From positions 151,871 to 215,870 of the IMG/VR virus record IMGVR_UViG_3300018891_000001: a stretch of DNA of 64,000 nucleotides; one strand, written 5' to 3'. The translations under genes and the position numbers were made by a program. Under the pieces are notes generated by a model that searched no databases, was not told where the DNA came from, and saw only the letters and a list, made by a program, of their open reading frames with translations. Below, piece after piece: positions 15,829 to 57,819 of this stretch. Every line of letters starts with the position of its first letter. Positions within the stretch are counted from its first letter, which is position 1.

Positions 15829-15868
15829 CTCCTTTTTTAAAGGGTGTGTAATGCATTACACACTTGGT

Positions 15869-26010: not shown

Positions 26011-26055
26011 TTGTAATGCATTACAAATTATATCATAAAAGTTAGGGAAAAGCAA
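26011..26055 (-). promoter_or_regulatory. sigma-A promoter with a perfect palindromic operator at +1
   Basis: TTGCTT-N17-TATAAT (TG-extended), then TTGTAATGCATTACAA. Confidence 0.75.
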
Positions 26056-55390: not shown

Positions 55391-56143
55391 TTAAGCTCCT
55401 TGTGGTGGGGCTGGCGGAAATCCGCCATTTGGTGCACCTACTGGAGCTCCATAACCGCCACCTGGTGGGTTAGGTGGAAATCCTCCTTGCGGAGCAGGAG
55501 GTGTATTTGATTGCGCCGGATTTGGCGGGAATCCTCCTCCTTGTGGTGGAGCCGGAGGTGGTGTAAATCCTCCCTGTTGCTGTTGTGGAGATGGATTGAA
55601 ATTACCTTGTGGCGGTGCTTGGAATCCACCTTGATACTGTCCTGTTGGTTGTTGTTGTGCTCCTTCACTGCCTTTTGGCATTTCTAATCCTACAAGCTCA
55701 GTAACTTTAATAGTTGGATAATAACTATAAGAACCATCTTGATTCTTTTGTTGGCGAAGTTCAGGGATTCCTTCTACGAACACTCGACGACCTTTCGGAC
55801 AATGATTAATCAAGAAATTATATTTACTATCGGCTCCTTCGTTGCCCCATACTTCAATAAACCAAAAATCAGTTCCTGCTTTTTCGCTACGATGATTAAT
55901 TGCGATCTTAGATGTACCCACTTTTGAATTGTTTACTATTTTTGAAGTTGGATCCTGGGTTAAACGTCCAATGACTTTGATTTTGGCATAATTATCAAAT
56001 CCAGAGCCATTACGTTGACCATTAGATTGCTGATCCATCGGATAGCCGCCTTGATTTGGATACCCTTGATTTGAGTACCCTTGATTTCCATAAGACTGAT
56101 TTCCATAAGACTGATTTCCATAAGGTTGACCGTAGTTATTCAT
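55391..56143 (-). CDS. ssb: Single-stranded DNA-binding protein with low-complexity tails
   Basis: IGRLTQDP, TDFW.IEVWG, KG..V.VEG OB-fold. Confidence 0.85.
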   Translation of the reverse strand: MNNYGQPYGNQSYGNQSYGNQGYSNQGYPNQGGYPMDQQSNGQRNGSGFDNYAKIKVIGRLTQDPTSKIVNNSKVGTSKIAINHRSEKAGTDFWFIEVWGNEGADSKYNFLINHCPKGRRVFVEGIPELRQQKNQDGSYSYYPTIKVTELVGLEMPKGSEGAQQQPTGQYQGGFQAPPQGNFNPSPQQQQGGFTPPPAPPQGGGFPPNPAQSNTPPAPQGGFPPNPPGGGYGAPVGAPNGGFPPAPPQGA

Positions 56144-57027: not shown

Positions 57028-57713
57028 TTATTTCTTATCCAGAATTTTGACTTGCACCATTACATCCCCCATTGAAACATGAGCATGAGGTACGTAATAG
57101 TCGATATCATACCCTTTGATCAAGCGACCTGTATCATCTGCTCGACGCTTTTCAGTGCGTCCATCCGGCCATTTAATAAGCACCCACGTACCAAGCGGAA
57201 TAATATTAGGATCTACAGCAATTGTAACTCCTTCTTCAGTAGGTCGCCCACTCGCAGTAATGCCATAGCCCGGATCGCCTGGACGTTTTCCAGTAGACTG
57301 ATAGTTATTATCATAAAAGGTTAAACGAAAATAAATCCATTCCCCTTCTCGTTGACCACGGAAAACTACGGGGTGCTTTTGAACTTTTTTTCTAATTCAG
57401 CTACCTTTTGCCTATAAACCTCTAATCTTCTCCGGAGGTCTTCAGTCTCCTTAGTTAGTCGATCGATTTCCATTTCAGACTGCTCTAATAAACCATTCAC
57501 CTTTTTCATTTCCTGATGTAATTGTTGATTTTCTTGAAAAAGGTCTTCATTTTTTTCAAGCACTTCTGTGTACTTTTCGCTCAACTTTTCGTGAGACTTA
57601 CGAACCTGTTTTAAGTCACTTTTGAACGAATAAAAATGAAGGGCTAGAGCAATAGAAGAAACCGTCGTTCCTGCTAGAATTAAGCGAGTTATCGTACGTG
57701 TCTTCTTCTTCAT
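57028..57713 (-). CDS. Membrane-anchored coiled-coil plus 3D-domain (lytic transglycosylase-like) protein via predicted -1 frameshift (~228 aa)
   Basis: A_AAA_AAG at 57390-57384; -1 frame encodes GITASG..IAVDP.IIPLG..ADDTG.LIKG..ID and has no start codon of its own upstream of the domain. Confidence 0.8.
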
Positions 57714-57819
57714 GCTTCGACTCCTTTATTTTATTCCCCTGTATCACTTCTCCCCAAGTTTATCATAAAACTTGGGGTAAATGCAAGGCATTACATCAAT
57801 ATATTACTTGTAATGCCTA

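What the first reader, a model, noticed from the sequence alone, without database searches (positions are those of the whole stretch)
57028..57713. Predicted programmed -1 frameshift appends a 3D cell-wall domain
Seen: the TM plus coiled-coil ORF ends GAA AAA AAG TTC AAA AGC ACC CCG TAG. The -1 frame runs 118 codons encoding a 3D domain missed by the ORF track. A possible stimulatory structure (CCCCGTAG...CAACGAGAAGGGG) follows. Established: A_AAA_AAG is the dnaX/IS3 slippery heptamer. Inference: short anchor-only and long enzymatic isoforms are made in a fixed ratio.
Basis: partly seen in the sequence, partly recalled or inferred. Interest (0 to 1): 0.6.

Follow-up and report, generated by a model that had tools for sequence, protein, structure and literature searches.

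The report
Conserved frameshift in phage cell-wall enzyme
A jumbo Bacillus phage gene for a membrane-anchored cell-wall-cutting enzyme is split into two reading frames at a slippery A_AAA_AAG site. The same split is kept in 13 diverged relatives, so the enzyme is almost certainly made by a programmed -1 frameshift that also leaves a short anchor-only protein.

Summary
On the minus strand, a 115-aa ORF (57713..57366: TM anchor plus coiled coil) ends GAA AAA AAG TTC AAA AGC ACC CCG TAG. The -1 frame runs 118 codons (57384..57031; stop 57030..57028) and encodes a 3D/YuiC-type lytic transglycosylase domain.

It is not a private indel or a sequencing error. Thirteen distinct homologous loci keep the frame break with an in-phase A_AAA_AAG inside the short frame overlap. 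They include four finished Bacillus licheniformis/paralicheniformis 200-212 kb "plasmids". The downstream frame is under strong purifying selection (dN/dS 0.05-0.17, dS>1) and has no conserved start codon. More distant relatives carry the same architecture as one continuous ORF.

A divergent subgroup has only A6G. That favours ribosomal slippage over transcriptional slippage.

An upstream SD-like element is enriched instead.

Two isoforms are expected: a 115-aa anchor plus coiled coil, and a 228-aa anchor plus coiled coil plus enzyme. Their ratio and their co-assembly are inferred, although a model supports a parallel coiled-coil dimer.

Verdict: a new, unannotated member of a known kind of recoding. 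Direct proof (protein or RNA) is missing.

The parts
57752..57800 (-). Conserved 5' region of the gene. It holds the TGTAATGCCTTGC motif (from 57795), the inverted repeat CCCCAAGTTT/AAACTTGGGG (57777..57752) and, just downstream, GTGATACAGGGG. It is probably a promoter/operator or 5'-UTR element.
   Evidence: Alignment of six relatives: the core is nearly invariant while the ORF diverges. The motif family recurs across the genome. Its function was not tested.
57721..57727 (-). Ribosome-binding site AAAGGAG, 7 nt before the ATG at 57713.
   Evidence: Read directly. Invariant in six relatives.
57366..57713 (-). 0-frame ORF of 115 aa, the short isoform. It has a basic N-terminus, one hydrophobic anchor (about residues 10-29, 57686..57627), a coiled coil (about residues 30-110, 57626..57384) and a tail FKSTP followed by TAG.
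   Evidence: Only sub-threshold coiled-coil Pfam hits. Homologues P0003-P0007 end in ...LEKKxxSTP. A parallel in-register dimer model scored 0.42 against a best control of 0.00.
57403..57407 (-). SD-like AAGGT, 12 nt upstream of the heptamer. It is a possible upstream stimulator.
   Evidence: Anti-SD duplex energy of the upstream 16-mers has a median of -5.85 kcal/mol in 14 loci, against -2.4 elsewhere in the same genes. The value is not corrected for relatedness, so this is suggestive only.
57397..57399 (-). TGA that closes the -1 frame just upstream of the shift site. It sets the 5' limit of the shift window.
   Evidence: In 6 of the 7 close relatives analysed there, the TGA abuts the heptamer (CTTGAAAAAAAG).
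57384..57390 (-). Slippery heptamer A_AAA_AAG, in phase for tandem -1 slippage of two tRNA-Lys.
   Evidence: Conserved in phase in 13 of 13 split loci, including the subgroup in which the run is only A6.
57366..57368 (-). 0-frame stop TAG, 5 codons after the heptamer. It sets the 3' limit of the shift window.
   Evidence: The position is conserved: 25 nt from the heptamer start in 6 of 7. In L008 and L023 the stop follows the heptamer directly.
57028..57384 (-). The -1-frame segment: 118 codons plus TAA. It encodes a linker (VQKHPVVFRGQREGEW) and the 3D/Sps lytic-transglycosylase domain (about 57339..57040). The active-site residues are T22, Y24, D58 (57213..57211), D84 (57135..57133) and D95 (57102..57100).
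   Evidence: Pfam 3D. YuiC hit at E 4e-9 with the aligned motifs. Model pLDDT 91.4. Foldseek top hit YuiC 4wlk at E 6e-7. dN/dS 0.05-0.17. Catalytic residues mapped from PMC4499186.

Best explanation
One gene makes two proteins by programmed -1 ribosomal frameshifting.

Ribosomes start at ATG 57713 and translate a basic N-terminus, a single membrane anchor and an ~80-residue coiled coil. Most then terminate at TAG 57368..57366. This gives a 115-aa anchor-only protein.

A fraction of ribosomes slips back one base at A_AAA_AAG (57390..57384), with the tRNA-Lys in the P and A sites re-pairing. These ribosomes read on into the -1 frame and make a 228-aa protein. It has the same anchor and coiled coil, followed by a YuiC/Sps-type (MltA-like, '3D') peptidoglycan lytic transglycosylase.

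The positive-inside N-terminus should place the coiled coil and the enzyme outside the membrane, next to the cell wall. Both isoforms share the coiled coil, so they probably pair. The slip frequency would then set how many anchored stalks carry an enzyme head.

Shown here:
- the sequence anatomy;
- conservation of the break and the heptamer;
- selection on the -1 frame;
- the fold and the catalytic residues.

Inferred:
- that the slip is ribosomal;
- its efficiency and its stimulators (most likely an upstream SD-like element in this subgroup);
- the membrane topology;
- hetero-pairing of the two isoforms;
- the role in infection.
For: (1). Thirteen distinct split loci were found. Group A comprises the window, L001 (same sequence as L024), L023, L004-L008, L017 and L020. 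Group B comprises L015, L016 and L021. All have an in-phase A_AAA_AAG inside a short overlap, bounded by a -1-frame stop just upstream and a 0-frame stop 0-6 codons downstream.

(2). The L001-type locus is 99.9-100% identical in four finished B. licheniformis/paralicheniformis replicons. An 89.6% identical variant in B. halotolerans keeps the split. This rules out sequencing error.

(3). The -1 frame has dN/dS 0.05-0.17 while dS is 1.1 to above 3. It has therefore been translated and selected over long divergence.

(4). Four of the seven closest loci have no ATG/GTG/TTG before codon 68 of the -1 frame.

(5). Both halves hit phrog_6631 (251 positions) collinearly.

(6). Continuous homologues have the same architecture of anchor, coil and 3D domain: LC76P1 (232 aa) and P0018-P0025 (186-201 aa).

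(7). Group B has a run of only A6, preceded by T and followed by G. That is exactly the ribosomal heptamer and is too short for efficient RNA-polymerase slippage.

(8). Group B has a stem (GGACGC/GCGTCC) starting 7 nt after the heptamer, with one G-C to A-U compensatory pair.

(9). An SD-like element lies 8-14 nt upstream in most loci.

(10). The enzyme domain is intact: the three Asp plus Thr/Tyr are kept and the top fold match is YuiC.

(11). The shared coiled coil scored 0.42 as a parallel dimer, against a best control of 0.00. That mark was reached by 21 of 30 proteins solved as pairs and 0 of 23 solved as single chains. The runs agreed in 100% of contacts and the partner pLDDT was at least 87.

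(12) PMC4066793 and PMC3711429. A_AAA_AAG is among the most shift-prone bacterial heptamers and is the dnaX site.
Against:
- In the window's subgroup no conserved downstream structure was found.
- In E. coli the bare heptamer shifts only about 0.3% (PMC4066793). The long form could therefore be very minor unless the SD-like element or an unseen stimulator acts.
- The heptamer is not avoided in this genome: 19 in-phase copies in ORFs. It is probably not highly slippery on its own.
- Nucleotide invariance at the site (runs of 9-10 nt) is not exceptional. Runs of 11-12 nt occur elsewhere in the gene.
- Group A has A7, so a contribution from transcriptional slippage cannot be excluded.
- Some relatives (L007 and group B) have an in-frame ATG ('MPSRG') that gene callers use as a start.
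- That Bacillus decodes AAA and AAG with a single tRNA-Lys(UUU) is from my own knowledge. It was not tested here.
Confidence: 0.72

Rival explanations
1. Transcriptional slippage. RNA polymerase adds one A in the A7 run, and a fraction of mRNAs then carries a continuous frame. The protein product would be identical (…LEKKVQKH…).
For: All group A loci have a run of seven A. Poly-A runs are known realignment sites (PMC3711429; PMC5009743).
Against: The three group B loci keep only A6, flanked by T and G, yet keep the split. The motif is in the X_XXY_YYZ phase in 13 of 13 loci and always ends in G. Both features matter for ribosomes and not for RNA polymerase. Programmed realignment is described for runs longer than 7 A (PMC3711429).
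Confidence: 0.12
2. Two separate genes. The 3D domain would be translated on its own, either from an internal start or by termination-reinitiation after the upstream ORF.
For: Gene callers and RefSeq annotate two CDS. L007 and group B have an ATG ('MPSRG') 2 to about 47 nt after the upstream stop.
Against: In the window, L004, L006 and L008 the first possible start is at codon 68-69, inside the fold and without an SD. A 3D domain made alone would lack any export signal. The -1 frame stays open and conserved from the heptamer to the ATG in group B. Both halves map collinearly onto one family and onto continuous homologues.
Confidence: 0.06
3. A broken gene or an artefact: a homopolymer sequencing error (true A8), or a recent inactivating indel that leaves a pseudogene.
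For: The break lies at a homopolymer. One close relative (L014, a 902-nt metagenome contig) is continuous.
Against: Thirteen independent assemblies from isolates and metagenomes share the break. Synonymous sites are saturated while the -1 frame stays under selection. L014 differs by an insertion outside the A run and is nested within the split clade. The position of the 0-frame stop varies (L008, L023) while the heptamer stays.
Confidence: 0.03

Closest known systems
IS3-family transposase OrfA/OrfAB (IS911, IS3): -1 frameshift at A_AAA_AAG
   Same: The heptamer is the same. A short upstream ORF product and a trans-frame fusion carrying the enzyme share an N-terminal part, through which they could oligomerise. 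The fusion is the minority product (heptamer usage in IS elements: PMC4066793). That OrfA and OrfAB pair through a leucine zipper is from my own knowledge.
   Different: The gene family differs: a cell-wall enzyme, not a transposase. No IS3-type pseudoknot or stem was found in the window's subgroup. The products are membrane proteins.
E. coli dnaX tau/gamma
   Same: A_AAA_AAG is flanked by an upstream SD-like element, and the site produces two isoforms with a common N-terminus at a set ratio (PMC3711429).
   Different: In dnaX the shift gives the SHORT product and a strong downstream hairpin is required. Here the shift gives the LONG product and no such hairpin is conserved in group A. The continuous variant L014 would resemble dnaX: a slip there would terminate after 2 codons.
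Tail assembly chaperone G/GT frameshift of tailed phages
   Same: It is a phage gene pair in which a -1 slip near the end of the first ORF extends a minority of chains with a second domain.
   Different: The genomic place and the function differ. This gene lies in the replication/recombination block, between a RecD/Dda-like helicase and SSB/RecA. It is not between the tail tube and tape-measure genes, and its product is an enzyme with a membrane anchor.
B. subtilis cdd -1 frameshift at CGA_AAG
   Same: It shows that Bacillus ribosomes slip -1 on A_AAG (cited in PMC5009743). That the cdd shift depends on an upstream SD-like sequence is from my own knowledge. It would match the SD-like enrichment seen here.
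   Different: The review calls the cdd shift incidental. Here the arrangement is conserved and is needed to make the enzyme.
B. subtilis YuiC and other Sps ('3D') proteins, including the SpsD group (coiled-coil COG3883 + 3D) and YorM of prophage SPbeta
   Same: The catalytic domain matches: Pfam 3D, 35-38% identity to YuiC, and the same five active-site residues and fold. The architecture of a coiled coil plus a 3D domain is known (PMC4499186).
   Different: Those proteins are made from a single ORF. Here the domain can only be reached by recoding, and the gene belongs to a ~216-kb phage.

Membership tests
-1 programmed ribosomal frameshift site, dnaX/IS3 type | A slippery heptamer X_XXY_YYZ in the 0-frame phase that allows both tRNAs to re-pair | tested here: met
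   A_AAA_AAG at 57390..57384 is in phase. The same holds in 13 of 13 split loci.
-1 programmed ribosomal frameshift site, dnaX/IS3 type | Two ORFs in a -1 relation, with the heptamer inside their overlap | tested here: met
   The overlap runs from the TGA at 57399..57397 to the TAG at 57368..57366. In most relatives the -1 frame opens exactly at the heptamer.
-1 programmed ribosomal frameshift site, dnaX/IS3 type | The arrangement is conserved among diverged homologues and the downstream frame is under purifying selection | tested here: met
   There are two subgroups. The 3D domains are down to 55% identical to the window's, dS is above 1 and dN/dS is 0.05-0.17.
-1 programmed ribosomal frameshift site, dnaX/IS3 type | Stimulatory elements: a structure 5-9 nt downstream and/or an SD-like sequence 8-14 nt upstream | tested here: inconclusive
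   Group A has no conserved structure: the consensus fold is -3.3 kcal/mol and z-scores are unremarkable. Group B has a 6-7 bp stem 7 nt downstream with one compensatory pair, but only three sequences were available. An SD-like element is enriched upstream, with p not corrected for relatedness.
-1 programmed ribosomal frameshift site, dnaX/IS3 type | The trans-frame protein is observed and the mRNA is unedited | not testable with these tools
No proteomic data are available.
3D / Sps (YuiC, MltA-like) lytic transglycosylases | A match to Pfam PF06725 above the gathering score | tested here: met
   38.3 bits against a cut-off of 23.8, E 1.5e-9.
3D / Sps (YuiC, MltA-like) lytic transglycosylases | The three aspartates (YuiC D129, D151 and the catalytic D162) plus T91 and Y93 | tested here: met
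   They align to D58, D84, D95, T22 and Y24 of the -1 product (residues from PMC4499186). All five are invariant in 7 close relatives. Y24, D84 and D95 are invariant, and T22 and D58 at least 90% conserved, in 73 homologues.
3D / Sps (YuiC, MltA-like) lytic transglycosylases | A double-psi beta-barrel fold like YuiC/MltA | tested here: met
   The model has pLDDT 91.4. Foldseek's best matches are YuiC 4wlk/4wjt/4wli (E 6e-7, rmsd 2.2 A over 82-84 columns), followed by MltA and expansins.
3D / Sps (YuiC, MltA-like) lytic transglycosylases | Export to the cell wall (a signal peptide or a membrane anchor) | tested here: inconclusive
   The -1 segment has none of its own. The anchor is read directly from ORF0: a basic N-terminus followed by about 20 uncharged residues. 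It reaches the domain only through the frameshift. No topology predictor was run.
3D / Sps (YuiC, MltA-like) lytic transglycosylases | Cleavage of glycan strands to 1,6-anhydro products | not testable with these tools
   This needs an enzyme assay or a zymogram.
Phage tail assembly chaperone G/GT frameshift | The gene pair lies between the major tail/tube gene and the tape-measure gene | tested here: not met
   The neighbours are a RecD/Dda-like helicase, small ORFs, SSB and RecA.

The most novel reading that the evidence does not exclude
The frameshift would act as a stoichiometry device for a phage-built complex at the cell wall. Anchor-only and anchor-plus-enzyme chains would pair through the shared coiled coil, so the slip frequency would fix how few stalks carry a lytic transglycosylase head. 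This would keep wall cutting sub-lethal during replication. Evolution could toggle the arrangement: in L014 a 1-nt insertion makes the long form the default, and a slip would then give the short form, as in dnaX. This would be the first conserved -1 frameshift known to govern a peptidoglycan enzyme.
Probability: 0.3. Interest if true: 0.7.

Novelty: new member of a known kind. Interest (0 to 1): 0.6.

Why it matters
Conserved -1 frameshifts in bacteria and phages are known mainly from dnaX, IS transposases and tail chaperones. This would add a new gene class: a membrane-anchored cell-wall enzyme of ~200-220 kb Bacillus phages and phage-plasmids.

The case is cleanly testable because relatives reside in culturable B. 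licheniformis and B. halotolerans strains.

It also corrects annotation. RefSeq and the gene callers list a 'hypothetical protein' plus a truncated '3D domain-containing protein' that starts at an internal TTG/ATG. The real products are most likely a 115-aa and a 228-aa protein with a common N-terminus.

The family offers natural variants for dissecting stimulators in a Gram-positive host: A7 or A6, the stop adjacent or 5-6 codons away, a stem or no stem, and a reverted continuous frame.

No paper in the searched library links frameshifting with 3D-domain or lytic-transglycosylase genes of phages.

Tried and rejected
- DNA search of the phage collection with the locus and with L017: no match. 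The nearest isolated phages are distant: the helicase is 41-43% identical to those of BpSp, AR9 and PBS1.
- Protein-pattern scans of genome contigs (twice) and metagenome contigs: nothing found. Two of the three viral contigs protein-pattern scans returned only the L001 contig and one returned nothing.
- DNA pattern GAAAAAAAG-N6-AGCACCCCGT in the metagenome and viral collections: only unrelated chance hits (L009-L012; three high-GC, one lower-GC) plus L001's contig.
- Alternative small hairpin ACC.CG/CG.GGT: 83% of cells paired, but its 3' arm is the Arg-Gly codons and it is absent in L001.
- Folding of 70 nt downstream in each sequence: z-scores from -2.9 to +1.4, with no common structure in group A.
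- Nucleotide invariance or synonymous conservation as a mark of an RNA element: not exceptional.
- A second candidate site in the genome (58906): spurious, because it lies inside a real 290-aa ORF.
- First structure model from a 7-sequence alignment: pLDDT 56, discarded. It was repeated with 73 sequences.
- A full-length fused query could not be sent to the remote searches, because a -1 join has no reference. The two halves were searched apart instead.
- The search of protein representatives was not used, because the claim does not rest on an absence of relatives.
P0008, P0011, P0013-P0015, P0024 and P0027 are short 3D ORFs that probably belong to split loci, but this was not checked at the DNA level.

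Full report
**1. What is there**

The feature lies on the minus strand.
- A strong RBS (AAAGGAG, 57727..57721) precedes ATG 57713.
- The 0-frame ORF (57713..57366, 115 aa, P0001) has three parts: a basic N-terminus, about 20 uncharged residues (a single membrane anchor), and about 80 residues rich in Glu, Lys, Leu and Gln.
- Those 80 residues give only sub-threshold matches to coiled-coil families.
- The heptamer A_AAA_AAG (57390..57384) is in X_XXY_YYZ phase.
- The -1 frame is closed by a TGA at 57399..57397. From G57384 it stays open for 118 codons, to TAA at 57030..57028.
- A slip would give a 228-aa protein with the junction ...LEKK|VQKHPVVF...

**2. The downstream frame encodes a real, intact enzyme domain**

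- It matches Pfam 3D above the gathering score.
- It matches B. subtilis YuiC in the PDB at E 4e-9.
- The YuiC paper (PMC4499186) names D129, D151 and the catalytic D162, with T91 and Y93. They align to D58, D84, D95, T22 and Y24 here.
- All five are invariant in the seven closest relatives. In 73 homologues, Y24, D84 and D95 are invariant and T22 and D58 are at least 90% conserved.
- A model built on 73 sequences has pLDDT 91.4. Its best structural matches are the YuiC entries (E 6e-7, rmsd 2.2 A), followed by MltA and expansins.

**3. It is not an error or a private indel**

The window comes from a virus record. The genome is 215,870 bp, has 37.4% GC and carries one tRNA.

Searching the N-terminal ORF found five homologues of 105-122 aa. 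Four of them end ...LEKKxxSTP. Searching the C-terminal part found many short '3D' ORFs on contigs of ~200-220 kb.

I fetched the DNA for thirteen distinct split loci.
- Group A: the window, L001 (same sequence as L024), L023, L004, L005, L006, L007, L008, L017-19 and L020.
- Group B: L015, L016 and L021, whose 3D domains are 55-58% identical to the window's.

In every locus an in-phase A_AAA_AAG lies inside the overlap of the two frames. In most loci the -1 frame opens exactly at the heptamer, as in CTTGAAAAAAAG. The 0-frame stop follows 0-6 codons later.

The L001-type locus is 99.9-100% identical in four finished B. licheniformis/paralicheniformis replicons of 200-212 kb. A B. halotolerans replicon is 89.6% identical and has the stop directly after the heptamer.

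RefSeq annotates two CDS there. The second starts at an internal TTG.

**4. The -1 frame is translated, and not from its own start**

- Pairwise dN/dS of the -1 segment is 0.05-0.17, while dS is 1.1 to above 3.
- In the window, L004, L006 and L008 the first ATG/GTG/TTG in that frame is at codon 68-69. That is inside the barrel and has no SD.
- Made alone, the domain would also lack any export signal.
- Both halves hit the same PHROG (phrog_6631, 251 positions) in collinear order.
- More distant relatives have the same architecture in one ORF: Lysinibacillus phage LC76P1 (232 aa) and P0018-P0025 (186-201 aa).

**5. A continuous close relative, and what it means**

L014 (P0009) reads straight through the site...ELEKKANEHPV... 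Its DNA keeps the A7 run but has one extra base in the spacer after it.

In a tree of the 3D domains, L014 is nested inside split group A, which has 99/94 support. The continuous P0018-P0025 lie outside both split groups. The order of the groups is unresolved.

L014 is therefore best read as a secondary re-fusion. This confirms that the fused protein is the functional long product. In L014 a -1 slip would terminate after two codons, like dnaX gamma. L014 is a single 902-nt metagenome contig, so an assembly error there cannot be excluded.

**6. Ribosomal or transcriptional slippage?**

Group A has A7. Group B has exactly A6, preceded by T and followed by G.

The phase and the terminal G are kept in 13 of 13 loci. 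These features matter to tRNA re-pairing, not to RNA polymerase. Programmed realignment is described for runs longer than 7 A (PMC3711429).

I therefore favour ribosomal slippage, with a possible minor transcriptional contribution in group A. Only cDNA can settle this.

**7. Stimulators**

Its 5' arm is invariant, so covariation cannot be judged.

A smaller hairpin pairs in 83% of cells, but its 3' arm is made of Arg-Gly codons and it fails in L001.

The consensus fold of group A is -3.3 kcal/mol. Single-sequence z-scores are unremarkable. The invariant blocks at the site (9-10 nt) are not longer than others in the gene.

Group B is different. A 6-7 bp stem begins 7 nt after the heptamer, has one G-C to A-U compensatory pair and a consensus energy of -10 kcal/mol. 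Only three sequences support it.

Upstream, most loci have an SD-like element (AAGGT, GAGGT or GGAG) 8-14 nt before the heptamer.
- The anti-SD duplex energy has a median of -5.85 kcal/mol, against -2.4 elsewhere in the same genes.
- Mann-Whitney p is 1.6e-6. It is not corrected for relatedness or for overlapping windows.
- The anti-SD string used was typed from general knowledge.

In E. coli the bare heptamer shifts about 0.3%, and up to tens of percent with stimulators (PMC4066793). The review PMC5009743 records a -1 shift at CGA_AAG in B. subtilis cdd. That the cdd shift relies on an upstream SD-like sequence is from my own knowledge.

The efficiency here is unknown. The long form is probably the minor product.

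**8. Two isoforms**

The short product's tail (xxSTP) is kept in most group A loci. In L017 the change ACC to ACT is synonymous in the 0 frame and non-synonymous in the -1 frame. This hints that the short product is itself selected.

Residues 30-110 are common to both isoforms. They were modelled as a parallel, in-register dimer with heptad-spaced contacts.
- Score 0.42, best of three controls 0.00.
- The mark was reached by 21 of 30 proteins solved as pairs and by 0 of 23 solved as single chains.
- The runs agreed in 100% of contacts, and the partner pLDDT was at least 87.

This supports pairing but does not show it. Hetero-pairing of the short and long chains, and a fixed ratio between them, remain inference.

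**9. Context and role**

The gene sits in a conserved block: RecD/Dda-like helicase, small ORFs, this gene, three small ORFs, SSB, RecA. It is not in a tail or lysis module.

The likely role is limited remodelling of the host wall from the outer face of the membrane during infection or carriage. This is inference from the YuiC/Sps family.

**10. Novelty**

The mechanism is classical. Its use for a peptidoglycan enzyme appears undescribed.
- Full-text searches combining frameshifting with the 3D domain, lytic transglycosylase or phage returned nothing relevant.
- The main recoding review does not mention such a case in the 300,000 of its 449,034 characters that are held.
- Public annotation treats the locus as two genes.

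I file it as a new member of a known kind.

**11. Limits**

- No reads, RNA or protein evidence was obtained.
- The joined 228-aa sequence could not be submitted to the remote tools, so the halves were analysed apart.
- Seven further short 3D ORFs were not checked at the DNA level.

Noticed in passing
window ~15847-15860, ~26012-26025; variants at ~2068, ~42645, ~51051, 57783-57809; more copies elsewhere in the genome: The palindrome TGTAATGCATTAC(A) recurs at a dozen or more places across the 216-kb genome. A variant, TGTAATGCCTTGC, lies just upstream of the frameshift gene. It looks like a phage-wide operator or promoter motif.
   Followed up: partly
window 57714-57800 (minus strand): The 5' region of the gene is more conserved than its coding sequence across six relatives. 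It includes a 10-bp inverted repeat (57777..57752) and GTGATACAGGGG. No sigma-70-like promoter was called there.
   Followed up: partly
window 55391-56143 (minus strand): The SSB-family gene encodes YGNQ-type repeats at its N-terminus and a long Pro/Gln/Gly-rich C-terminal tail. Both are unusual low-complexity extensions for an SSB.
   Followed up: no
L024 (NZ_CP035189), L023 (NZ_CP114067) and hits H46-H50: Relatives of this virus record are deposited as circular, non-mobilizable 200-212 kb 'plasmids' of B. licheniformis, B. paralicheniformis and B. halotolerans. They share synteny around the gene. This suggests jumbo phage-plasmids and points to Bacillus as the host.
   Followed up: partly
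L014:230-270: One close relative has a continuous frame through a 1-nt insertion after the A7 run. There a -1 slip would give the short form instead, which is the dnaX-like polarity.
   Followed up: yes
L017:2405-2520: This relative was recovered on 15 contigs (the three shown are 92, 215 and 217 kb). It carries a ~25-residue Gln/Glu/Lys-rich insertion in the -1-frame linker between the shift site and the 3D domain. Its HP is changed to HS while the 0-frame STP is kept.
   Followed up: partly
genome C1:58906-58912 (outside the window; L025:1407): This is the only other A_AAA_AAG with a long open -1 frame downstream. It lies inside a real 290-aa ORF, and its '0 frame' is a spurious 53-aa ORF. 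It is not a frameshift site.
   Followed up: yes
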